Assembly: GCA_965603825.1 (NCBI GenBank)
Contig: CBFDEM010000020.1
Coordinates: 877,960-941,959, forward strand
DNA: 64,000 nt
Direction of reading: 5' to 3'
DNA from: Blepharisma stoltei ATCC 30299
Taxonomy: Eukaryota; Protista; Ciliophora
Positions 29,809 through 43,453 of the stretch are shown in pieces (the first letter of the stretch is position 1; each line of letters begins with the position of its first letter). A program made the translations under genes and the position numbers. Below the pieces are notes generated by a model. That model was given only the letters and a program-made list of their open reading frames with translations, searched no databases and had not been told where the DNA came from.

Positions 29809-32253
29809 TTATATAATAAGCGAAGAAGTGTTTACTGTATATGCTGTTGTTGATAAAGAATTTAGTGGCGAACTGTGTGCAGACTTAAATCGCGTTTTCT
29901 TTAATTTTCGGTCTTTAGAACTTTGAGCGGTCTGTGGGCTTTGCGGGATATTATTTTTTATTCTTGTTGATAATCTTGAAATTTTTTTCATAAAAGGCTG
30001 GGGACTTGTGACAGCTGAAGCTGATTTTTCTAATTTTTGTGATGCTCGCTTATGGTAGATTTTTAAGTCTTTTAGCCTTTTATCTAGATTTCTAGCTTCT
30101 TGGAAAATCCCTTGGTAACGCATTGTAGGAGAAAGCTGGGGAAGCCCATTAGACAGGCTTCGCTTTAGTATTTTTTGTGATTTTCCTGGGCTTTTTTTAA
30201 GATCTTCTGTTTTTTCTTGATCTGGAGGGGCTTCATAAACTTTTTCTATCACTCTGTATCTAGAAATAGGCTCAGTGTCTTCAGTGATAAAGATTCTTTG
30301 CTTCATTTGATCTTGTGTTTGCTTTTTAAATCTTGGCTCTTTATAAACTCCTCCTGGCATATTAATTTTTAGATTTTCATAGAATGCATTAATTTTCTTC
30401 GGATAGCGCTGTTTATATAAAATCACTATGTCTTTAAATAAAGTATTTGTGGATGTTTCAGTTGCTGTAAAAAATCTAAGAAAAATAGTAAAAAGTGTCA
30501 AAACTTGATTTTTGAAATTTCTATGGATTTCTTCTAACAAAATAATGATATTTTTTTCAATATTTTCCCAATAATTTTCAAGATTTTCTTTATTTTTTTC
30601 ATTTTTCAGATAATTTATTAAATTTTCTTCAGTCAATAATTGCCTTATAATAGGTATAGAATTCAACAATTCAATGAATTTTTTTGAGTTTTCTTTTTCA
30701 CTAGGAAATATCCTTAAATAGACCTCATCAATTTCTGCGTTAGACAAAGGTAAATAAGGTAGCATTTCTTCTTCAAATGTGCTTTCACCATTCTCTTCTT
30801 CATGCTTTGAGGTAGCAGTCGATTTCATACTTTCACGAGATCGCGCTGCTTCTACACGAGATAGTGGTTTTTGAATAGGCTTTTGTGGCTTAAGCTGCTC
30901 AACTATTATTCGCTTTATTGAGCCTTTTCTTAAATTTGGGAGCTCTATTGACGTATATTCATAAACTTCATTTACATTAGTGCCTAAATCGTTACTGTAT
31001 TTTTTAATTAGCCCCAAAACTTTGAATGACTGGCTTATATCGCCAAGTGCTTGATAATAAATTTTCATAATTAAATTATCAATTCCATGGGCTTCTTGAA
31101 CTGAAAAATTTACTGTAACATCATTAAGACTTGACCTAATATCATTATAAGTCATAGGATTTTTAGGTATTTCATTTAAGTCTGTGTCCATTTTTAGCAG
31201 TTCTAATTCATTTTTTAATTCCTCACACAAGTTTTCGTCAAGAATATGCTGGCTTGTAAGCTCAGTAAACATAGTGGATAATGAAATTTCATGAGATTTT
31301 AATTCTTTAAAACCTTCGATTATTTTTAATGTATCTTCATCAGCAATTCCATTCATAAAATTTATATGGTAGCCTTGAGTTTTTAAAATTTCTTCAATTA
31401 TTTTGAATTTTTCGTGATACGTTTTTAAATTCTGGGCATTCATCTTTGATAATTCTTTAATATTAATTTTTTCTTTTACTCCATTTTCTAGCTCATTTAT
31501 TAAATTGATTTTGGCTTCTTTTTTTGCTTTGTTTTTCATTCTCGCATAGGTGATTCTTTCTATTAAAGATTGATATTGATTTTCAACTTTTTCTTTTTTT
31601 CTCAGCATTAAATCATAAGCTCTTCTATAAGATTCTTTCATATTTTCTCCATCATTTTTGCATTGGATCACTTGCCCTTGTGCTGATGTGAGCTCATTTA
31701 AAGCTAAAAACTGAGCATTTTTTATTTCTGTATAATTCGTTGTAAGTCTTTTGAAAGCATCAGCAGTTTCAACTGACAATTTTTTGCTTTCCCCCATCTC
31801 TTTTCTTTTAATTTCTAATTTTGTTTTAAGTCTTTCAGTTTCAAACAATTCTTCTTCGATTTTTTCATTCATTTCATTAATATCTCCTTTGATTTTTTCA
31901 ATTTTTTCCAAATAAGCAGAAAAATCAGAATCTCCTCATTGCGCTTGTTTTAATTCAGATACGAGTGTTGATAAGCAATTTAATTGGATTTCTTTTTGTG
32001 TATTTCGTGCTGTGGCTTCATTAAGGGCTTTGAAAAGAGTTTTTGTTTCTAAATATTGTGAGGTTTTTTGTCTTTGAGAGACAATATGGCTTCCATATTC
32101 TTTATTTATAAGGCATTCAGTTGCACTGTATTCGTCTCTTAGCATTTCACTTAAATTCCCTTTCTCTTCTTGATTCGTCGCGATTTCTGAAACGCTGAAA
32201 ACTGATTCATTATTTAAATTTATTTCTTCATCTGGTGCTGGAGGTTTAAGCAT
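29809..32253 (-). CDS. Coiled-coil protein (814 aa), unknown function
   Basis: Two ORFs joined by TGA=W at 31936; heptad-rich E/K N-terminal half; basic, Ser-rich tail. Confidence 0.8.
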
Positions 32254-34183: not shown

Positions 34184-34234
34184 ATAATGGCTTAAATATC
34201 TATTTTTATTCGACACCATTTTGGGGAAATAATG
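34184..34234 (+). promoter_or_regulatory. Conserved 5' element of the cathepsin Z-like paralogues (ACCATTTTGGGGAAATAATG)
   Basis: Near-identical motif immediately before the ATG of copies 1, 2 and 3. Confidence 0.6.
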
Positions 34235-35911
34235 ATTAGCAATAAGATAATCTTTATAAATCTTGCTGTTCTGGTCATTTTTACAAATGGAAGCTACCCT
34301 GATATCAATTCTTCTTTAGATCTGCCTTCAAATTTGTTCTGGGGTAAAGAAAAGGGAATTAGCTATCTTACGGTATCAAGAAACATAAAAAATCTTGAGT
34401 ATTGTTCAGGTTCTTGGGCCTTAGCTGCCACTACCGTCCTTTCTGATCGCTTTAAGGTCCTAAGGAATGCTTCATGGCCTGACTATAGCATTTCTCCACA
34501 AGTCGCGCTTAGTTGCATATCAAGTGTCCAAGGCTGCTCTGAAGAAGGAGACCCAACACTAGTCTACGATTATATTTTAAATAATGGAATTACTGATGAA
34601 ACTTGCGCAATTTACCAAGCTCGCGATTTTTCAAACGGAGCCCCTTGTGATAGATTAGCCATATGCAAAACTTGTTTCCCTAATGGAAAATGTGACATTC
34701 CTAGTAAATATTATCTTTATAATATCACAGGATATACTGTAGCTAAAGGTGAAACTCAAATGCTAACTGCTTTACAAAGTGGGCCAATTGCATGTAGACT
34801 CAATAGCACAAATGAGTTTGTAGAATACAACTCTATGGATGATATACTTGTCCCTACAAAATCTCCAAGTAATGGTACAATTTATGTTTCAATTGTTGGA
34901 TATGGAATTGATTCTTTTGGCACAAAATACTGGATGGGCAGAAACTCTTGGGGAACAAGCTGGGGAGATATAGGATTCTTTAATCTAATAAGAGGAACAG
35001 ACGCTTTAGGGATTGAGGAATATTGTGTTTACCCTACTCCTAACTTAACAGTTACTGTTGTCACTACTAACAGTCAAGGAATAGAAGAAAGAACATTTAT
35101 CAATAATTTTGAGCTCCCTAAGTATCTAGAAGAACCAGCTAATTCTTTTAGAGCCAAGCAAGCTGAAGATAAAGCTTTAGCTGCTGTTCCTTCAGCATGG
35201 GATTGGAGAAATGCAAAAGGTAAAAATTATTTATCATGGGTCAGAAACCAAAATATTCCTCAATATTGTGAAGCTTCTTGGGCCTTTGCTCCTGCATCTT
35301 CTGTCACTGACCGCTTAAATATTTTGCATTTTAATGACACTTTTCCTCAATTCATTATATCGCCACAAGATATAATTAATAACGGTGTAGGAAATTGCAG
35401 CTCTGGAGACGTGTCAGCACTCTATAGAGATTTCTTACAGAATGGGTATTCAGACGACACATGCTTGCAGTATGTAGCGGACAATTCAAGCACATTTGAC
35501 TGTTATAATTGTGTACCGCCAGCACCTCAGGAAGGTAAAAACTCATACTGCAGCCCTATTGCGCCTCCTTTCTTATTTAAAGTCAGCAGGTATAAAAACC
35601 TTGCTGGGGCGACCAAAATGATGCAAGAAATTTATACGAATGGACCAATCACATGTGGAATCTACGCAAGCAAAGGATTTGCTAACTACACTGGAGGAAT
35701 TTATAGTGAAATTTCAAAAATTTCCACAATAAGCCAATATATCTCTCTTGTAGGATGGGGAGTAGACCCTTCAACGAAAATTCAATACTGGATTGGAAGA
35801 AATTCTTGGGGAACAGGCTGGGGTGAGTATGGATTTTTCAGAATGCAAATGTTTAGAGATAACCTTGGGATTGAGACTGATTGCGTGGCTGCAGTTCCGA
35901 TTTTTGGATAA
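34232..35911 (+). CDS. Double-domain cathepsin Z-like C1A protein 1 (559 aa), predicted pseudoprotease
   Basis: Two papain domains (YLTVSRN..YCSGSW; RNQNIPQYCEASW; RNSWG twice). Catalytic Cys is Ser in both domains; His is Ile or Gln. Confidence 0.9.
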   Translation: MISNKIIFINLAVLVIFTNGSYPDINSSLDLPSNLFWGKEKGISYLTVSRNIKNLEYCSGSWALAATTVLSDRFKVLRNASWPDYSISPQVALSCISSVQGCSEEGDPTLVYDYILNNGITDETCAIYQARDFSNGAPCDRLAICKTCFPNGKCDIPSKYYLYNITGYTVAKGETQMLTALQSGPIACRLNSTNEFVEYNSMDDILVPTKSPSNGTIYVSIVGYGIDSFGTKYWMGRNSWGTSWGDIGFFNLIRGTDALGIEEYCVYPTPNLTVTVVTTNSQGIEERTFINNFELPKYLEEPANSFRAKQAEDKALAAVPSAWDWRNAKGKNYLSWVRNQNIPQYCEASWAFAPASSVTDRLNILHFNDTFPQFIISPQDIINNGVGNCSSGDVSALYRDFLQNGYSDDTCLQYVADNSSTFDCYNCVPPAPQEGKNSYCSPIAPPFLFKVSRYKNLAGATKMMQEIYTNGPITCGIYASKGFANYTGGIYSEISKISTISQYISLVGWGVDPSTKIQYWIGRNSWGTGWGEYGFFRMQMFRDNLGIETDCVAAVPIFG

Positions 35912-36540
35912 ATTAATTAATTTATTCAGTTATATGAAAGTTTAATTAGCTTGTATTTTTTCATATAGCTCTGTCAAAGTTAATATGCTTAGCCTAAAAT
36001 TGGTTAAATAAATTAAAAAGAGAAAAAATTAAATAACTGTTAGAATAAATATTTCAAGCATTCTAATTAGCTATTTAGATATGTAATTTCAAGAAATGGA
36101 AATAATTGACTAATATTAGCAAAAAAGAGAAATAATGTCACCAAATATGTTAGTCGACACTAAATTGTATTCAAAGAGAATAATTAAAATATCTAGAAGC
36201 CGAAATTTTATAATTGAATTCTGAAAATCACTAATGCATAAAATAATACAATATTTCAAAAGTACAGCTGAAAAAGAAAATATAAATTTATATGCTATTT
36301 TCAAGAGTTAAAAATCCTTCAAAGAAGCCAATTAAGCAAGGAAGCGCTAATTAGCACCTATATTGAAAAAGAAAATTATATTTTAAAAACCCAATGCTCT
36401 GGACTCGACTTTAATTGGGTTATTCCTAAGAAAATTCAATTTAAAAGGTTTAAGCTTGCTTTAAAATAAAAAAAATATTCAAACGTTTGTTTCTTTAAAA
36501 CCTTTATATTTTCTTGTGTATTTCATAAAGAAAGCTTTTA

Positions 36541-36593
36541 TAATAGCCTAAACTCTTATTTTTTAACTGGTGACCATTTTTGGGGAAATAATG
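36541..36593 (+). promoter_or_regulatory. Conserved 5' element, copy 2 (ACCATTTTTGGGGAAATAATG)
   Basis: Same motif as at 34215 and 39803. Confidence 0.6.
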
Positions 36594-38270
36594 TTTAAAG
36601 CTCAGCTAGCCATTTTAACACTTGCTACTTTCTTGACTTTTGCAAATCAAGGAAATTCTGATTTTACTTCTCAGTCCTTAAGCTTGCCTACAAATTTGTT
36701 TTGGGGTAAAGTAAATGGTACCAGCTACCTTACGGTAACAAGAAACATAAAAAATCTTGAATATTGCTCATCCTCTTGGGCCATGGCCGCCACAACTGTC
36801 CTTTCAGACCGCTTCAAGGTCCTTAGGAATGCTTCATGGCCTGACTTTAACATATCTCCACAAGTAGCACTTAGTTGTATATCAAGTGTCCAAGGCTGCT
36901 CTGAAGAAGGAGACCCAGCGCAAGTCTACGATTATATTTTAAATAATGGAATTACTGAAGAAACTTGCGCAGTTTACCAAGCTCGCGATTTTTCAAATGG
37001 AGCCCCTTGTGATAGATTAGCCAGATGCAAGACTTGTTTCCCTAATGGAAAATGTGACATTCCTAGCAAATATTATGTATACAATATCACTGGATATGCT
37101 GTAGCCAAAGGCCAAACACAAATGCTAAACGCTTTACAAAGTGGGCCTATTGTATGCAGACTGAATAGCACAGATCAGTTTGTGCAGTACAGCTCTAACG
37201 ATGATATACTTATCCCTACACAATCAGCAAGCAATGGCACCATTTATGTATCAATTGTTGGATATGGAGTCGATTCTAAAGGCAATAATTATTGGATCGG
37301 CAGAAACTCTTGGGGAATTGGCTGGGGAGATGCAGGATTCTTTAATATTATAAGAGGAACTGACGCTTTAGGGGTTGAAGAATATTGTGTTTACCCTACT
37401 CCTTCTCTAATAGTTACTGTTGTGAACACTAACCAAGGGATAGAAGAAAAAACTTTAATCAGTAGTTTCGATCTCCCCAGAATTCAAGAGCCAGCCAAAT
37501 CTTTCAGAGTAAAACCAGTAGCTGATGAAACTCTAGCTGCCGTTCCTTCATCCTGGGATTGGAGAAATGTAAAAGGTAAAAATTATTTATCATGGGCTAG
37601 AAACCAAAATATCCCACAATACTTGGATGCTTCTTGGGCCTTTGCAACTGCTTCTTCTGTTACTGACCGTTTAAATATTCTATTTTTTAACGACACTTTT
37701 CCACAGTTCATTATATCCCCACAAGACATGATCAATAATGTTGTAGGAGCATTCGGTTCTGGAGATCTATCCTCACTTTATAAATATTTCCAACAATTTG
37801 GGTTTTCAGATGACACATGCCTGCAGTATGTAGCAGAAAACCGAAATTCGTTTGACTGCAGCATTTGTGTACCTCCAGCACCCGCTGATGTAAGCGATAA
37901 TTCATACTGCAGTTCTGCTCCGATCCCTATAACATTTAAAATCAGCAGCTACAAAAACCTTGCCGGGGCGACAAAAATGATGCAAGAGATTTATACAAAT
38001 GGACCAATCACATGTGGAATTTATGCAAGCGCAAAGTTCGCTAATTACACATCAGGAATTTATAGCGAAATTTCAAAAATTTCCACAATCAGTCAATATG
38101 TATCAGTTGTAGGCTGGGGAGTAGATCCATCAACAAACAATAAATATTGAATTGGGAGGAATTCTTGGGGCACAGGCTGGGGTGATTATGGATTCTTTTT
38201 TATGCAAATGCTTAGAGATAACCTTGGCATTGAAACTGACTGTACGGCTGCAATCCCAACTTTTAAATAA
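36591..38270 (+). CDS. Double-domain cathepsin Z-like protein 2 (559 aa), predicted pseudoprotease
   Basis: ATG at 36591; TGA=W at 38148 (KY-W-IGRNSWG) extends the ORF to TAA at 38268. Motifs YCSSSW and YLDASW. Confidence 0.9.
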
Positions 38271-39119
38271 ATTAGTTTATTCACATTAAATAATAGGAGT
38301 TTATCTGATTTGAATCATAGCAAAATCGCTAGTATTGAAAAACCCATTTAATAAAAAGTAAATATCTATAGACTGGTACCTGGATAGATAAATTACTCTT
38401 GCTATTTAAATATATACTCTTCTTTACATTTCTATCCCAAAAGCTCTTTTATACATATTAGATCAGCATTTAATTGGTTAATACTCATTATAACCCTATT
38501 TAAAGGCTTATAGTAGCTCAGAAAATGATAGATTAATATTAAGTCATAATTTTTTGATAGAATTAAAAGTTTGTAAGTAGGCTCGACTTGCTCAGTAACC
38601 CTATATTAAGCAAATATGCAAAAATGATTGGCATAGTAATTTATTCTAATGGCTATCTGAAACAAATAACTTTACAATTATAGCATTTAAAATGAAAGGT
38701 AGCTCAATGATTCTTTAGAATTATGCTCTTATTGCTTTAATATATGAAAATCAAGGCCTAATTATATTTCCATCTTTATAAACTATAAAATATGAGTATA
38801 TTGCATGCATATATATAATTAAAAATATTCGCGAACCACTCTGGAAGAATTTAGCGAAATTGCAAGGATCTCTAGACTTAATTTGTATATTTTTGTTGTA
38901 AATGCGTTTCAGAATCTTAAATATTGATCAGGAAGTAATTATTTAGGAATAGGCTGTATGGATATGAATTTTTTAAGATGCAAATGTTTAGAGATAATTA
39001 TGGAATTCCTGCTGATTGAGCAGCCTAAGCTTTTAAATAAATTAGCTATATTATCTAATTTATGAAAGGGCACTTTTACTCGATTTAGTATGTCTATACA
39101 AGATTTGGTGATCAAACTG

Positions 39120-39612
39120 ATGGGGATCAGGCAGAATTTACTTTTCCTTGCAGATATAGTCATTCAGATAATGCATGTCACCAGTATATTGGAGCCCAAT
39201 ATGTTGAATATACTTGATTTTTCTATCGCCAACACCTAAAAAGATTTGAATTCAAATTACATAAGTATTAAGCCTCTTTTCTTATTTAAAATCAGCTTAC
39301 AAATACCTTGTTGGGGCGACAAAAATGATGCAAATAATTATGCAAATATATCTATTATGTGTGAATCTGCGAAAGCACAAAGTTTGCTAACTACACTGGA
39401 GGAGTTTATATCGAAATTACAGGAGATTCTAGAGCTAGTCAATTGTGTCAGTTGTAGGCTGTGGAATAGACACGCCCACGAAAACTCAATACTGGATAGG
39501 AAGAAATTCTTGGGACATATTTTGGGGCGAGTATGGATTTTTCAGGATGCAAATGTTGAGAGATAACCTTGGTATTGATACTTATAGTGTCTGTATTCCT
39601 ATTTTTTATAAA
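39120..39612 (+). pseudogene. Decayed cathepsin Z-like copy (second domain)
   Basis: Frameshifted homology to copy 1 (ttcttatttaaaatcagc..ccttgttggggcgacaaaaatgatgcaa; QYWIGRNSWDIFWGEYGFFRMQMLRDNLGID). Confidence 0.85.
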
Positions 39613-39770
39613 TTAATTGAATTATTCAATTAATTAAAAAGGGTTTATTATATGGCTCTATCAGAAGTTAAATCTAAAACTTCATTTATAGAATAATGAT
39701 TAAGGCAAATAATGTAATAAATAAAACACTTGGCAAAAAGAGTATGAGCTTGTGCAAATCATAAGAAATT

Positions 39771-39823
39771 AATAAGGCCAAATATCCATTTTTTAATTCA
39801 ACACCATTTATGGGGAAATAATG
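39771..39823 (+). promoter_or_regulatory. Conserved 5' element, copy 3 (ACCATTTATGGGGAAATAATG)
   Basis: Same motif as before copies 1 and 2. Confidence 0.6.
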
Positions 39824-41524
39824 TTTAGCTCGAAGCTAACCTTTGCAACTCTTGCTATCCTTATCGTTTTTACGGCTTCCAGATATGCTGGTCCCAGCAA
39901 CCATGCTTCTCAGGAACTAAGTGCTCCTACAAGCCTATTTTGGGGTAAAAATAATGGCATCAGCTATCTTACAGTAACAAGAAACCACAACATTCCTCAA
40001 TTCTGCACAAGCTCTTGGGCTGTCGCTTCAACCACAGTCCTTTCTGACCGCTTCAAGGTCCTCAGGAATTCTTCATGGCCTGACTATAACATTTCTCCTC
40101 AAGTGGCCCTAAGTTGCATTTCAGGAGTTCAAGGATGCACTACAGAAGGTGACCCAGTTTCAGTCTACCAGTACATTTACCAAAATGGAATAACTGACGA
40201 AACCTGTGCAAGCTACCAAGCCCGCGATTTTTCTAATGGAATTGCATGTGACAGATTAGCTGTATGCAAGAATTGTTTACCTAATGGAAAATGTGACATT
40301 CCTAACAGATACTTCATTTACAATATCACTGGGTTCGCAGTCGCCAAAGGAGTAACTCAGATGGTAAACGCTTTACAAAGCGGCCCTATTGTCTGTAGGA
40401 TTGGTGTAACATCCCAATTCCAAAACTATCAGAATGGAATTCTTACACCGACTGCTGGCGCTCAAGTTCTTTTTACCTCTTACGTTTCAATTGTAGGATA
40501 TGGAGCCAGTGCTACTGGGACTAATTACTGGATTGGCAGGAATTCTTGGGGAACTGTATGGGGAGATGCAGGTTTCTTTAACTTGGTCAGTGGAAATGAC
40601 GCTTTGGGAGTCGAGGATTATTGTGTTTATCCAACTCCTAATAAAACAATTACTGTAGTTACTACTAACAATCAAGGAGAAGAAAAAAGATCTTATGTAG
40701 ATATTGCTGATCTCCATAAGCTTGAAGAAGAGCCAATTCAAGGCTATCTTAGAGCCAAGCCAGTAACTGAGGAAACTCTTAGCGCTGTTCCTGCAAGCTG
40801 GGTCTGGAGCGACGTCAAAGGTAAAAACTACCTATCCTGGGTCAGAAACCAAAACATCCCACAATACTGTGAAGCTTCCTGGGCCTTTGCTGCCACATCT
40901 TCCCTTACCGACCGCTTCAACATTTTGATTTTCAACGACACTTTTCCTCAATTCACCATTTCACCACAAGTCCTCCTAAACTGTGGAGTCGGAAACTGCA
41001 CTGGTGGAGATCCAACAGCAGTTTACAATTATGCTCGCATGAATGGAATCCCAGACGACACCTGCCAACAATATGTAGGCGACTTTTCTGAAACCTGCAA
41101 TAGTGCACAAGTATGCCAAGCTTGCGTATCTCCAGCACCAGCTAATGACACTGAAAATTCAGTCTGCAATCCAACTACTCCTGCACACTTATTTAAAGTC
41201 GGGAATTATGGCAATCTTGCAGGAGTCACCAAGATGAAGCAAGAAATTTACAATAATGGGCCAATCACATGCGGAATCTATGCAAGCAAAGCTTTTGCAG
41301 CCTACACTGGAGGGATTTTTAAGGAAATTTCTAGAAGCACCACAATCAGCAACTTTGTGTCTGTTGTGGGTTGGGGAATTGAAAAATCCACGAACACTGA
41401 GTACTGGGTTGGAAGGAATTCTTGGGGAACCAGCTGGGGTGAGTATGGGTACTTCAAGATGCAGATGTATAGAGATAACCTTGGGATTGAAACTGACTGC
41501 ACTTGGGCAATTCCAAGCTTTTAA
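39821..41524 (+). CDS. Double-domain cathepsin Z-like protein 3 (567 aa), predicted pseudoprotease
   Basis: RNHNIPQFCTSSW and RNQNIPQYCEASW; His positions are Ser and Asn. Confidence 0.9.
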   Translation: MFSSKLTFATLAILIVFTASRYAGPSNHASQELSAPTSLFWGKNNGISYLTVTRNHNIPQFCTSSWAVASTTVLSDRFKVLRNSSWPDYNISPQVALSCISGVQGCTTEGDPVSVYQYIYQNGITDETCASYQARDFSNGIACDRLAVCKNCLPNGKCDIPNRYFIYNITGFAVAKGVTQMVNALQSGPIVCRIGVTSQFQNYQNGILTPTAGAQVLFTSYVSIVGYGASATGTNYWIGRNSWGTVWGDAGFFNLVSGNDALGVEDYCVYPTPNKTITVVTTNNQGEEKRSYVDIADLHKLEEEPIQGYLRAKPVTEETLSAVPASWVWSDVKGKNYLSWVRNQNIPQYCEASWAFAATSSLTDRFNILIFNDTFPQFTISPQVLLNCGVGNCTGGDPTAVYNYARMNGIPDDTCQQYVGDFSETCNSAQVCQACVSPAPANDTENSVCNPTTPAHLFKVGNYGNLAGVTKMKQEIYNNGPITCGIYASKAFAAYTGGIFKEISRSTTISNFVSVVGWGIEKSTNTEYWVGRNSWGTSWGEYGYFKMQMYRDNLGIETDCTWAIPSF

Positions 41525-41689
41525 GCAATAAGTTAATTCATTAAACATCGCCACAATTTTTAAGTTTCAAATAAAACCGTTTTTATATATTGCAAGAAAA
41601 AATATAGCGAATCTTTGCTTCATTATATTTCCTATCGTAATAAGCACATTTCTCTGTTATTTACTCACATTTTATACGTGGAGAATAAT

Positions 41690-43453
41690 ATGTCGAGGTT
41701 TTTGCTTCAACATTTACTGATAGTTCTTTTTATTTCTTCTGCTTCTGGCTGCTTTATTAAGAACAATGACATCGTCCCTCCGCATTCGGCCCCAGAAACC
41801 CTTGTTGAGCCTTCAAGTCTTCCTTCTTATTTATTTTGGGGAAATTACAGTGGCATCAACTACCTCACAGTTTCAAGAAACCAGCACATCCCTCAATACT
41901 GCGGTGGCTGCTGGTCCTTTGCCTCCACTTCTGCCCTTGCTGACCGCTTTAAGATTCTCCGTAATGCGACATGGCCTGATTACAATATTGCCCCACAAGT
42001 TCCAATCTCTTGTGATTATCTGAGTTTTGGCTGCAATGGGGGAGATCCTATGACTGTTTATAAGTACATATATGACCGTGGGATCACTGATGAAACCTGT
42101 GCCACTTACCAAGCCAAAGATAGAGACAATGGGCTTGAATGCACAAGGCTATCAAGATGTAAAACTTGCTACAGTAACGGAAAATGCGACATTCCTGACA
42201 CCCATCTTGTTTACAACGTAACTACTTATGGCTCAGCCATTGGCGAAACCCAAATGCTAAACGCTTTACAAAATGGTCCAATTGCCTGTGCAATGGATGC
42301 TACAAATGAATTCGAAAACTACACAGGAGGGATTTTCATTCCTACAGACCACGAGGTTGTCACCAATCATGTCGTAGAGCTTGTAGGCTATGGGGTAGAA
42401 AATAATACCAAATATTGGATTGGGAGAAATTCCTGGGGCACTTATTGGGGAGAAAAAGGACTCTTTAGGATCATTAGAGGAAAAGATGCCCTAGCTATTG
42501 AAGAATACTGCGCTTGGGCAACCCCAGATCCAGTTGTAAAACAGGTAAATAAGACCTTGGTAGAGGAAAAGACAGTAGCGGAGCTCAAGATATTAGAAGC
42601 TTTTGAGAGACCTGAAAAAGCAGGCTGTAGAGTAGAAAAATCAGAACTAAAACTGCAGGCAGAAGCAAATGGGTATGTGATAGAAGAAAACGCTGCTCCA
42701 GCACTCCCAGCAGCTTGGGACTGGAGAAACATGTCTGGGCTGAACTACATGTCCTGGACAAGGAACATGAATAACCCACAGTTCTGTGGGGCCTGCTGGG
42801 CACACGCAGCTACGTCTTGTATTGCAGACAGAATCAATATTCTAAGAAATGACACTGTTGCCCAGATTTCTATATCTCCACAGGTAATTCTCAATTGTAA
42901 TGCAGGCGGCAACTGCACAAGTGGAGACCCAATTGGGGTTTATAAATTCGCCCAGCAATATGGTCTTCCGGATGATACTTGCCAACAATATCTTGCAGAG
43001 CCAGTAGAAAATGCGACTTGCACAGCACGACAAGTCTGTGAAACCTGCATCCCGCCTCCTCCTAAAGAGGGACAAACTTCTAATTGTTCAGCTATAACAA
43101 ATCCTCCTCTCTGGTATGTTGGGTCTTATGGGTTTTTAGCTGGAGTTACGAAAATGAAGCAAGAAATTTATACAAACGGGCCAATCAGCTGCGGAATTTA
43201 CTACTCAAAATCTTTTGAAAACTACAAAGGTGGCATTTTCAGCGAGCTAACAATGACTACAAAGGTCAATTATGAAGTCGCCTTAGTAGGTTGGGGAGTC
43301 AATAAAGCAGGCACTGAATATTGGATTGGTAGAAACTCACAAGGCACAATGTGGGGCGAAAGTGGATTCTTCAGAATCCAAATGTACAGAGACAATCTCG
43401 GTATTGAAACAGACTGCAGTTGGGCAATCCCTAATATAACCAGAACTAACTAA
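41690..43453 (+). CDS. Double-domain cathepsin Z-like protease 4 (587 aa); domain 1 intact, domain 2 probably inactive
   Basis: Domain 1: RNQHIPQYCGGCW, NHVVELVGYG, RNSWG (complete Q/C/H/N set with the cathepsin X HIP mini-loop). Domain 2: RNMNNPQFCGACW, NYEVALVGWG (H->Y), RNSQG. Confidence 0.92.
   Translation: MSRFLLQHLLIVLFISSASGCFIKNNDIVPPHSAPETLVEPSSLPSYLFWGNYSGINYLTVSRNQHIPQYCGGCWSFASTSALADRFKILRNATWPDYNIAPQVPISCDYLSFGCNGGDPMTVYKYIYDRGITDETCATYQAKDRDNGLECTRLSRCKTCYSNGKCDIPDTHLVYNVTTYGSAIGETQMLNALQNGPIACAMDATNEFENYTGGIFIPTDHEVVTNHVVELVGYGVENNTKYWIGRNSWGTYWGEKGLFRIIRGKDALAIEEYCAWATPDPVVKQVNKTLVEEKTVAELKILEAFERPEKAGCRVEKSELKLQAEANGYVIEENAAPALPAAWDWRNMSGLNYMSWTRNMNNPQFCGACWAHAATSCIADRINILRNDTVAQISISPQVILNCNAGGNCTSGDPIGVYKFAQQYGLPDDTCQQYLAEPVENATCTARQVCETCIPPPPKEGQTSNCSAITNPPLWYVGSYGFLAGVTKMKQEIYTNGPISCGIYYSKSFENYKGGIFSELTMTTKVNYEVALVGWGVNKAGTEYWIGRNSQGTMWGESGFFRIQMYRDNLGIETDCSWAIPNITRTN

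What the first reader, a model, noticed from the sequence alone, without database searches (positions are those of the whole stretch)
34232..43453. Tandem array of double-domain cathepsin Z-like genes in which 7 of 8 papain domains lack catalytic residues
Seen: four intact, signal-peptide-bearing genes, each with two C1A domains. In copies 1-3 all six domains have Ser (TCT/TCC, e.g. 34412-34414) where the catalytic Cys sits (CGSCW becomes CSGSW, CEASW, CSSSW, LDASW, CTSSW). The catalytic His is replaced by I/Q, I/Q and S/N respectively. Copy 4 keeps a complete triad and the cathepsin X HIP mini-loop in domain 1 only; its domain 2 has Q->M, H->Y and W->Q. The ORFs stay full length, keep most disulfide Cys and use almost no TGA, which argues for retained function rather than decay. 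Known: Cys->Ser papain-fold proteins exist (Plasmodium SERA serine-type, sponge silicatein, scabies SMIPP-Cs). Silicatein keeps its His, so this case differs. Inference: one active enzyme plus three secreted or lysosomal pseudoproteases acting as decoys, substrate binders, or structural/extrusome proteins. This is the best candidate here for an undescribed system.
Basis: partly seen in the sequence, partly recalled or inferred. Interest (0 to 1): 0.85.

Follow-up and report, generated by a model that had tools for sequence, protein, structure and literature searches.

The report
Expressed dead double-cathepsin X gene cluster
A ciliate (Blepharisma stoltei) carries a tandem cluster of four two-domain cathepsin X genes, three of which have lost the catalytic residues in both domains yet are transcribed and kept by selection, so they are working non-cutting "pseudoproteases", one case of a habit that turns out to be very common in this genome.

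Summary
Window 34232-43453 holds four intact, secretory-type genes, each with two Peptidase_C1 domains of cathepsin X type. Copies 1-3 have Ser for Cys25 and no His159 in both domains. Copy 4 is complete only in domain 1. One correction: copy 2 runs to 38270 through an in-frame TGA, which codes Trp in this organism.

Copies 1-3 are not decaying. All four copies are present in poly(A) RNA contigs. dN/dS is 0.18-0.25 in each domain, the same as for an active paralogue pair. A second Blepharisma has a 90%-identical, equally dead orthologue of copy 3. Truly decayed fragments lie between copies 2 and 3.

Context lowers the uniqueness. The two-domain architecture is widespread in ciliates. The genome has three further, fully active two-domain genes. 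About half of its 84 tabulated C1 domains lack the nucleophile.

Inactivation looks stepwise: domain 2 first, in the ancestor shared with copy 4, then domain 1 on a long stem branch, with shortening of both pro-like segments.

Function is inferred only: non-catalytic binding glycoproteins. In passing, the Blepharisma mating pheromone gamone 1 is predicted to have a papain fold. That gives an in-species precedent for a dead papain-fold protein used as a secreted ligand.

The parts
34232..35911 (+). Copy 1: two-domain cathepsin X-like pseudoprotease, 559 aa. Signature (Q19 C25 H159 N175 W177) is ISINW in domain 1 and QSQNW in domain 2.
   Evidence: ORF and translation. Two PF00112 domains, E 2.8e-66. 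Key codons. A 133-nt RNA contig identical to 34567-34699 is present in all four runs.
36591..38270 (+). Copy 2: two-domain pseudoprotease, 559 aa, ISINW | QSQNW. In-frame TGA=Trp at 38148-38150. Domain 2 has lost both Cys22 (now L) and the Cys of the G-N-C motif (now F), taken here as its disulfide partner by papain numbering.
   Evidence: Sequence, translation with TGA=W, alignment. RNA contigs 36480-38290 show 0 differences, including the TGA.
38963..39016 (+). Decayed remnant of the last ~18 codons of a copy-1-like gene.
   Evidence: tblastn, 72% identity to copy 1 residues 533-550.
39265..39606 (+). Decayed remnant of the last ~116 codons of domain 2, with stops and a frameshift. 78% nucleotide identity to copy 1. 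Transcribed at low depth.
   Evidence: tblastn and blastn. PF00112 match with 2 TAG and 1 TAA. RNA contigs 38946/39033-39599.
39821..41524 (+). Copy 3: two-domain pseudoprotease, 567 aa, HSSNW | QSNNW. mRNA 3' end near 41556.
   Evidence: ORF. PF00112 x2, E 7.9e-71. RNA contigs 39815-41556 with a run of A after 41556. AlphaFold pLDDT 91.2, pTM 0.90. Foldseek best match 1ef7, TM 0.91. 90%-identical orthologue P0175.
41690..43453 (+). Copy 4: half-active gene, 587 aa. Domain 1 is QCHNW with the His-Ile-Pro loop. Domain 2 is MCYNQ. It keeps a Cys in both pro-like segments.
   Evidence: Translation. PF00112 x2, E 6e-83. Alignment to procathepsin X 1deu. RNA contigs from 41637/41687 onward. Orthologue in a related genome, L031.

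Best explanation
Copies 1-3 are functional but non-catalytic members (pseudoproteases) of the ciliate two-domain cathepsin X family. They are made as secretory-pathway, N-glycosylated, disulfide-stabilised proteins.

They keep the papain fold of both domains and a fixed inter-domain arrangement. They cannot cut peptides by the papain mechanism, for these reasons:
- Both domains lack the Cys25 nucleophile (now Ser) and the His159 base.
- Domain 1 also lacks the oxyanion Gln19.
- All six domains lack the His23 that anchors the substrate C-terminus in cathepsin X.
- The Gly-Gly substrate-binding strand of domain 1 carries an insertion.

Inferred history:
1. A both-active two-domain ancestor lost activity in domain 2. 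This state is shared by copy 4, its orthologue in a related species, and copies 1-3.
2. A duplicate then lost domain 1 as well, during a burst of change. The two pro-like segments that keep the zymogen latent were shortened and lost their Cys.
3. The dead gene was amplified in tandem, with some copies decaying. It has since been held under purifying selection.

Inferred mode of action: the proteins bind rather than cleave. They would act as soluble lumenal or secreted binding or ligand proteins that use the remodelled clefts or surfaces. The precise partner is unknown.

What is shown: loss of the catalytic residues, an intact fold, transcription, selection, and an orthologue in a second species. 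What is inferred: secretion, glycosylation, the order of events, and the binding role.
For: - Catalytic columns.
- The fold is retained. There are two PF00112 domains per gene. The AlphaFold model has pLDDT 91.2 and pTM 0.90. Its best PDB match is cathepsin X 1ef7, TM 0.91. Copies 1 and 3 keep 113 and 116 of the 139 columns that are at least 90% conserved in the family, and the deviations cluster at cleft motifs. All 10 structural Cys of domain 1 are kept.
- Transcription. Contigs of four runs end at gene borders, none lies in 38450-38849, and there is a run of A after 41556. They show 0 differences over copies 2-4, plus a contig specific to copy 1.
- Selection. NG86 dN/dS is 0.24 for c1-c2 (bootstrap 0.18-0.31), 0.25 for c1-c3 and 0.245 for c2-c3. 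Each domain gives 0.18-0.22. The active pair gives 0.21.
- Contrast with real decay at 38963-39016 and 39265-39606.
- Orthologue. P0175 is 90% identical, full length, and has the same dead signature.
- History. The tree is ((c4, relative's c4), (c3, (c1, c2))), and the stem to the trio is 0.69-0.79 substitutions per site. Domain-2 features H23N, GIDAT->GIYAS and loss of His159 are shared by copies 1-4 and the relative.
- Pro-like segments. The N-terminus is 36-40 aa against a family median of 51. The linker is 59-60 aa against a median of 78. Neither holds a Cys, whereas copy 4 keeps a Cys in both.
- Signal-peptide-like N-termini and 7-11 N-glycosylation sequons.
Against: - There is no protein-level, localisation or binding evidence.
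- The RNA evidence comes from assembled contigs whose library type is only guessed by the tool. I infer RNA from contig borders and the run of A. Expression levels cannot be ranked.
- Copy 3 differs by 10% from its orthologue. The active paralogue's orthologue is about 99% identical outside a chimeric stretch. Constraint on copy 3 is therefore weaker than on the enzymes, or it is evolving adaptively.
- Copy 3 and its orthologue carry His at the Gln19 position next to Ser25, so residual or novel chemistry in that one domain is not excluded.
- The branching order that puts the trio's origin before the species split could be a long-branch effect (AU p = 0.034 only).
Confidence: 0.75

Rival explanations
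1. Signalling or recognition ligands. Copies 1-3 would be secreted glycoprotein ligands (pheromone-like, adhesion or self/non-self recognition), in the way gamone 1 is. They would act through receptors rather than on substrates.
For: - Gamone 1 of this species was located with the published primers.
- It is predicted to have a C1A papain fold without Cys25: pLDDT 83; Foldseek top 50 hits all C1A; VIA Z 15.3 to cathepsin B over 215 residues.
- Copy 3 diverges between species about as fast as gamone 1: 90% identity against 87-96%.
- The holder runs date from 2022 and come from one study, as does the species' published conjugation RNA-seq time course. I infer they are that series; this was not shown.
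Against: - There is no detectable sequence relationship between gamone 1 and copies 1-3.
- There is no evidence that they leave the cell.
- The parent family is typically lysosomal or digestive.
- No stage-specific expression could be measured.
Confidence: 0.12
2. Regulators of active cathepsins. The dead proteins would soak up endogenous or prey-derived cystatin-type inhibitors, or pair with active two-domain paralogues such as copy 4 and modulate them.
For: - A highly expressed inactive cathepsin B paralogue of Trichobilharzia regenti binds cystatin (PMC7054455).
- Human cathepsin X forms a homodimer (cited in PMC8836896 and PMC10380794).
- Copy 3 and copy 4 are adjacent, and both are present in all four runs.
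Against: - The cleft that inhibitors recognise is heavily remodelled: an insertion in the Gly-Gly strand, and loss of Gln19, His23 and His159.
- No cystatin or partner was examined.
- Co-presence in contigs is not co-regulation.
Confidence: 0.1
3. Still enzymes. Ser25 would act as a nucleophile with a relocated base, for example His56 at the Gln19 position in copy 3 domain 1. That would give a serine-type hydrolase on a papain scaffold.
For: All six nucleophile codons are Ser (TCT or TCC), one step from TGY, not random residues. His56 of copy 3 is conserved in its orthologue.
Against: - Copies 1 and 2 have Ile at both the Gln19 and the His159 positions of domain 1.
- No domain keeps His159.
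- In the orthologue, the His159 position of domain 1 changes from Ser to Ala.
- In my own knowledge of the field, Cys-to-Ser papain-fold proteins that have been tested, such as SERA5, behave as pseudoproteases (title of PMC5500368).
Confidence: 0.04
4. Decaying pseudogenes or assembly errors: the Ser codons would be consensus errors, or the genes would be on the way to loss.
For: Decayed fragments exist in the same array. The trio's Pfam scores are the lowest among full-length C1 matches in the genome.
Against: - The ORFs are full length.
- dN/dS is about 0.2 in both domains.
- RNA contigs show 0 differences.
- There are six independent Ser codons.
- The same residues appear in an independent transcriptome of another species.
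Confidence: 0.02

Closest known systems
Human cathepsin X/Z (PDB 1EF7, 1DEU; MEROPS family C1A)
   Same: Same fold. 40-42% identity to each domain and TM 0.91. Copy 4 domain 1 keeps Gln19, the His-Ile-Pro mini-loop, Cys25, His159 and Asn175, and has a Cys in its short pro-segment.
   Different: The window genes fuse two such domains in one chain. Seven of the eight domains lack catalytic residues. The pro-like segments of copies 1-3 are shortened and have no Cys.
Ciliate two-domain cathepsin X family (for example the Tetrahymena thermophila 'papain family cysteine protease' P0052, and B. stoltei CAG9310019.1)
   Same: Same architecture: signal peptide, C1 domain, linker of about 60-80 aa, C1 domain. 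Copies 1-4 nest inside this family in the tree.
   Different: 106 of 127 aligned members are canonical in both domains. Some have one dead domain. Only copies 1-3 and the copy 3 orthologue lack Cys25 and His159 in both.
Plasmodium SERA5 and the serine-type SERAs
   Same: Papain-fold proteins with Ser in place of the catalytic Cys. They are expressed, and SERA5 acts as a pseudoprotease (PMC5500368, PMC2878606).
   Different: By my own knowledge, the serine-type SERAs keep the catalytic His and have a single papain domain with large flanking regions. Here His is lost and there are two dead domains.
Trichobilharzia regenti cathepsin B1 inactive paralogue
   Same: A highly expressed, catalytically inactive paralogue that sits in a family of active digestive cathepsins (PMC7054455).
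   Different: It is a single-domain cathepsin B type. It is reported to bind cystatin, which suggests a largely native cleft. Here the cleft is remodelled.
Blepharisma gamone 1 (blepharmone)
   Same: Same organism. A secreted N-glycosylated protein predicted here to have a C1A papain fold without the nucleophile.
   Different: Single domain, 305 aa. No detectable sequence similarity to copies 1-3 and no Pfam match. Its role as a mating pheromone is established (PMC10892320). The role of copies 1-3 is not.

Membership tests
Peptidase C1A, papain fold | Sequence and fold match to Peptidase_C1 | tested here: met
   PF00112 occurs twice in each of the four genes, E 2e-53 to 6e-83. The AlphaFold model of copy 3 matches 1ef7 with TM 0.91.
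Active C1A cysteine peptidase | Cys25/His159 dyad with Gln19 and Asn175 | tested here: not met
   Met only by copy 4 domain 1. Copies 1-3 have Ser25 and I/Q, I/Q, S/N at position 159. Copy 4 domain 2 has M19 and Y159.
Cathepsin X (carboxypeptidase type) | His23-Ile-Pro mini-loop between Gln19 and Cys22 | tested here: not met
   The loop length is kept, but His23 is K, K, N in domain 1 of copies 1-3 and N in every domain 2. It is present only in copy 4 domain 1. The role of His23 is as in the title cited in PMC10380794.
Cathepsin X (zymogen) | Short proregion with a Cys that bonds the active-site Cys | tested here: not met
   Copies 1-3 have no Cys in the N-terminal pro-like segment or in the linker. 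Copy 4 has a Cys in both, and 82 of 109 relatives have a Cys in the linker. The covalent link is stated in the title of PDB 1DEU.
Ciliate two-domain cathepsin X family | Signal peptide plus two tandem cathepsin X-type domains, and placement inside the family tree | tested here: met
   Architecture. More than 100 relatives of the same length and domain pattern. The copy 1-4 clade sits inside the family with 99-100% support.
Functional pseudoenzyme (pseudoprotease) | Catalytic residues lost, yet purifying selection and expression | tested here: met
   dN/dS 0.18-0.25 with upper bootstrap bounds of 0.35 or less. Poly(A) RNA contigs. Conserved dead orthologue.
Functional pseudoenzyme (pseudoprotease) | A demonstrated non-catalytic activity of the protein | not testable with these tools
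   Needs biochemistry, localisation or knock-down.
Serine-type papain-fold proteins (SERA5-like, silicatein-like) | Ser at position 25 with His159 retained | tested here: not met
   Ser25 is present in all six domains, but His159 is absent in all six.

The most novel reading that the evidence does not exclude
Blepharisma has turned the papain fold into a general scaffold for secreted, non-catalytic ligands. On this reading, copies 1-3 are extracellular signalling or recognition glycoproteins of the same functional kind as the mating pheromone gamone 1, which is predicted here to be a papain-fold relic. The many nucleophile-less C1 genes of the genome would then form a ligand repertoire rather than a set of spoiled enzymes.
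Probability: 0.12. Interest if true: 0.85.

Novelty: new variant of a known kind. Interest (0 to 1): 0.55.

Why it matters
Pseudoproteases are a known category. This case is a clean natural series of one fold in one genome. The states are:
- both domains active (three genes elsewhere in the genome);
- one domain dead (copy 4, conserved in two species);
- both domains dead but expressed and selected (copies 1-3);
- truly decayed (the fragments).

The series allows direct tests of what a papain fold does once it stops cutting, and of whether a fused dead domain serves its active neighbour.

The wider context found here raises the stakes:
- About half of the 84 tabulated C1 domains in B. stoltei lack the nucleophile.
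- The species' mating pheromone is predicted to be a papain-fold protein, a link not mentioned in any paper I could find.

If that prediction holds, it gives gamone 1 a structural family and suggests where to look for the function of the dead cathepsins.

Tried and rejected
- **Orthologues of copies 1-3 outside Blepharisma.** A full-length search, domain 1 and domain 2 fragment searches and JGI metagenome contigs gave nothing above 55% identity. The exceptions were the genome's own paralogues, the copy 4 orthologue (P0133/L031) and the MMETSP copy 3 orthologue.
- **DNA for P0175, for an orthologue dN/dS.** It is not on record.
- **Synteny with the related genome (L031).** Only the upstream gene at 31615-32229 is shared. 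The gene between it and the copy 4 orthologue (ZZ/NBR1-like) has no counterpart in the window. The absence of copies 1-3 there is therefore only weak evidence.
- **Is the C43 single-domain pseudoprotease (L016) gamone 1?** No. It has 300 aa and no primer sites. Gamone 1 lies on contig 28.
- **Sequence-level link between gamone 1 and C1 peptidases.** None of 16 family members has a Pfam hit. PDB phmmer gave nothing. hhalign gave E 0.09 and 0.043, not significant although collinear. Only the fold comparison is clear.
- **Literature on two-domain cathepsin X or on dead cathepsins in ciliates.** Nothing found.
- **Ranking expression by contig depth.** Not done, because the tool warns against it.


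Full report
**Identity of the DNA.**
The window is contig 20, 877960-941959, of a 41.46-Mb assembly in 64 contigs. A paralogue of the window genes is filed as Blepharisma stoltei. The published B. stoltei ATCC 30299 macronuclear genome is 41 Mbp, uses UGA for Trp and has tiny introns (PMC9942806; PMC10892320). Genes were therefore read with TGA=Trp.

**The observation.**
- With TGA=Trp there are four complete ORFs on the + strand: 34232-35911, 36591-38270, 39821-41524 and 41690-43453.
- The bacterial-code ORF of copy 2 ends at 38150. That TGA lies exactly at the conserved Trp of Y-W-IGRNSWG, and the frame runs on to a TAA.
- Each protein has a hydrophobic, signal-peptide-like N-terminus, 7-12 N-glycosylation sequons and two PF00112 domains.
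- The closest solved structure is human (pro)cathepsin X.
- Additional losses: Gln19 in domain 1 of copies 1-3, His23 of the cathepsin X mini-loop in seven of the eight domains, and a one-residue insertion in the Gly-Gly strand of domain 1.
- Among 127 aligned two-domain family members, 106 are canonical in both domains. Only the window's copies 1-3 lack both Cys25 and His159 in both domains.

**Are copies 1-3 alive?**
Four lines of evidence say yes.
1. Transcription.
   - Four runs of one 2022 study hold 77-78% of the region's words.
   - Their contigs start and stop at gene borders. They leave 38450-38849 empty, and one ends in a run of A right after 41556, 32 nt past the copy 3 stop. I therefore take them as poly(A) RNA.
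   - Copies 2, 3 and 4 are covered with no differences, including the Ser codons and the TGA. No joints were seen, so there are no introns.
   - A 133-nt alternative contig in all four runs is identical to copy 1 at 34567-34699.
2. Selection.
   - Nei-Gojobori dN/dS is 0.24 for copies 1-2 (bootstrap 0.18-0.31), 0.25 for copies 1-3 and 0.245 for copies 2-3.
   - Each domain separately gives 0.18-0.22.
   - The fully active paralogue pair on contig 1 gives 0.21.
3. A second species. An MMETSP transcript (P0175, 570 aa, complete ORF) is 90% identical to copy 3. It has the same dead positions, except that the His159 position of domain 1 is Ala instead of Ser.
4. An internal control. Two fragments between copies 2 and 3 show what decay looks like in this genome: stops, a frameshift and truncation.

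**Fold.**
AlphaFold on a 112-sequence alignment gives pLDDT 91.2 and pTM 0.90 for copy 3. Confidence is low only in the signal peptide and in part of the linker. The high pTM suggests a defined inter-domain arrangement. Foldseek puts cathepsin X first, with TM 0.91 and 42% identity. Copies 1 and 3 keep 113 and 116 of the 139 columns that are at least 90% conserved in the family (median 137, minimum 120). Their deviations are concentrated in the cleft motifs. All ten structural Cys of domain 1 are kept. Copy 2 domain 2 has lost both Cys22 and the Cys of the G-N-C motif, which I take to be its disulfide partner by papain numbering.

**Family context.**
- The two-domain architecture is common in ciliates, including Tetrahymena, Euplotes, Protocruzia and many environmental sequences.
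- B. stoltei has three more such genes with both domains canonical: two in tandem on contig 1 and one on contig 38.
- Other lineages have lost one domain, for example a clade with Thr/Ser at Gln19 and Val/Ala at Cys25 in domain 1.

**History.**
- Copies 1-4 form a clade, with a stem of 0.69-0.79 substitutions per site leading to copies 1-3.
- A related genome (Logan assembly of SRR24908292, also TGA=Trp) has an orthologue of copy 4 next to the same upstream gene. Its domain 1 is canonical. Its domain 2 is dead in a different way: Q/S/F/N/L against M/C/Y/N/Q.
- Features of domain 2 are shared by copies 1-4 and this orthologue: His23->Asn, GIDAT->GIYAS and loss of His159. This indicates that domain 2 died once, before the copy 4/trio duplication. 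Domain 1 died later, on the trio stem.
- The careful tree pairs copy 4 with the relative's gene (95/92). The AU test gives p = 0.034 against a window-only clade, so the trio lineage probably predates that species split. Long-branch attraction could mimic this.
- No trio orthologue was found in that relative or anywhere else except the MMETSP Blepharisma.
- The trio's N-terminal and linker segments, which are the counterparts of the cathepsin X proregion, are among the shortest in the family and lack the Cys that copy 4 and most relatives have. This fits a protein that no longer needs zymogen latency.

**Mechanism.**
What is shown is that the papain catalytic machinery is absent from all six domains, while the fold, expression and constraint remain. 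I infer that the proteins act by binding. Three roles are compatible: lumenal or secreted binder, regulator of active cathepsins, or extracellular ligand. I cannot discriminate among them.

Two cautions apply.
- Copy 3 diverges faster between species (10%) than the active paralogue, which differs by about 1% outside a chimeric stretch of the transcript.
- Copy 3 has a His at the Gln19 position beside Ser25, and that His is conserved in the orthologue. Unusual chemistry in that one domain is therefore not excluded.

**Wider findings.**
- The genome has about 100 PF00112 matches.
- Of 84 full-length domains that I tabulated, only 38 have all five canonical residues and 44 lack Cys25. Many of those 44 keep His159. 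An array on contig 11 lacks both Cys25 and His159. The window cluster is thus one instance of a genome-wide pattern.
- Its suggestion of a signalling glycoprotein led me to test gamone 1.
  - The published primers place the gene on contig 28. The ORF has 305 aa and six sequons, as published for this strain.
  - It has no Pfam or PDB sequence match, and only a non-significant though collinear hhalign match.
  - Its AlphaFold model (pLDDT 83, pTM 0.84) matches only C1A peptidases. The Foldseek top 50 are all C1A, with E about 1e-5. VIA-align gives Z 15.3 to cathepsin B over 215 residues at rmsd 3.4, and its top 19 hits are all C1A.
  - No paper in the library links gamone 1 with papain or cathepsin.

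**Verdict.**
The pseudoprotease reading is supported. The claim of an undescribed system is not: this is a new, doubly dead variant within a known family and a known category. It is made more interesting by the genome-wide abundance of such proteins and by the gamone 1 precedent.

The scan had noted this same stretch once more from an overlapping window (s1-673558). I found no report of it on other DNA.

Noticed in passing
G000 contig 28, about 483986-484903 (- strand); L041:1734-2651 (-): The gene for the mating pheromone gamone 1 was located with the published primers. It has 305 aa and six sequons. It is predicted to have a C1A papain fold without the nucleophile: AlphaFold pLDDT 83; Foldseek top 50 hits all cathepsins; VIA Z 15.3 to cathepsin B. 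No Pfam or sequence-level match exists, and no paper found mentions the link.
   Followed up: yes
Whole genome G000; loci L047-L116: Of 84 full-length Peptidase_C1 domains tabulated, only 38 have Gln19/Cys25/His159/Asn175/Trp177 all canonical, and 44 lack Cys25 (replaced by G, S, D, A or P). Most of those 44 keep His159. An array on contig 11 (about 710-737 kb) lacks both Cys25 and His159.
   Followed up: partly
G000:C43:4716-5348; L016:1186-2088: A single-domain, 300-aa, signal-peptide-bearing C1 pseudoprotease (Cys25->Ser, His159->Ala) lies about 4.7 kb from one end of contig 43. It is not gamone 1.
   Followed up: partly
L031:1769-3511 (Logan assembly of SRR24908292): A related TGA=Trp ciliate has an orthologue of copy 4. 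Its domain 1 is canonical. Its domain 2 is dead with different residues (Q/S/F/N/L). So a half-dead two-domain enzyme is conserved across species, while its dead catalytic positions drift.
   Followed up: yes
window 38946-39599: The decayed gene fragment between copies 2 and 3 is still covered by RNA contigs at low depth in all four runs. It looks like a transcribed pseudogene remnant that has kept its 3' end signals.
   Followed up: partly
G000:C1:413222-416866 (L005, L006): The tandem pair of fully active two-domain paralogues shows dS 0.74 in domain 1 but only 0.20 in domain 2. This suggests gene conversion confined to domain 2. The MMETSP transcript P0177 looks like a chimera of the two.
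   Followed up: no
Proteins P0018-P0020, P0025-P0027, P0037, P0063 (other organisms): A separate clade of two-domain cathepsin X proteins has domain 1 with Thr/Ser at Gln19 and Val/Ala at Cys25, but keeps His159. P0037 lacks the nucleophile in both domains and keeps both His. Loss of the nucleophile has therefore recurred in this family.
   Followed up: partly
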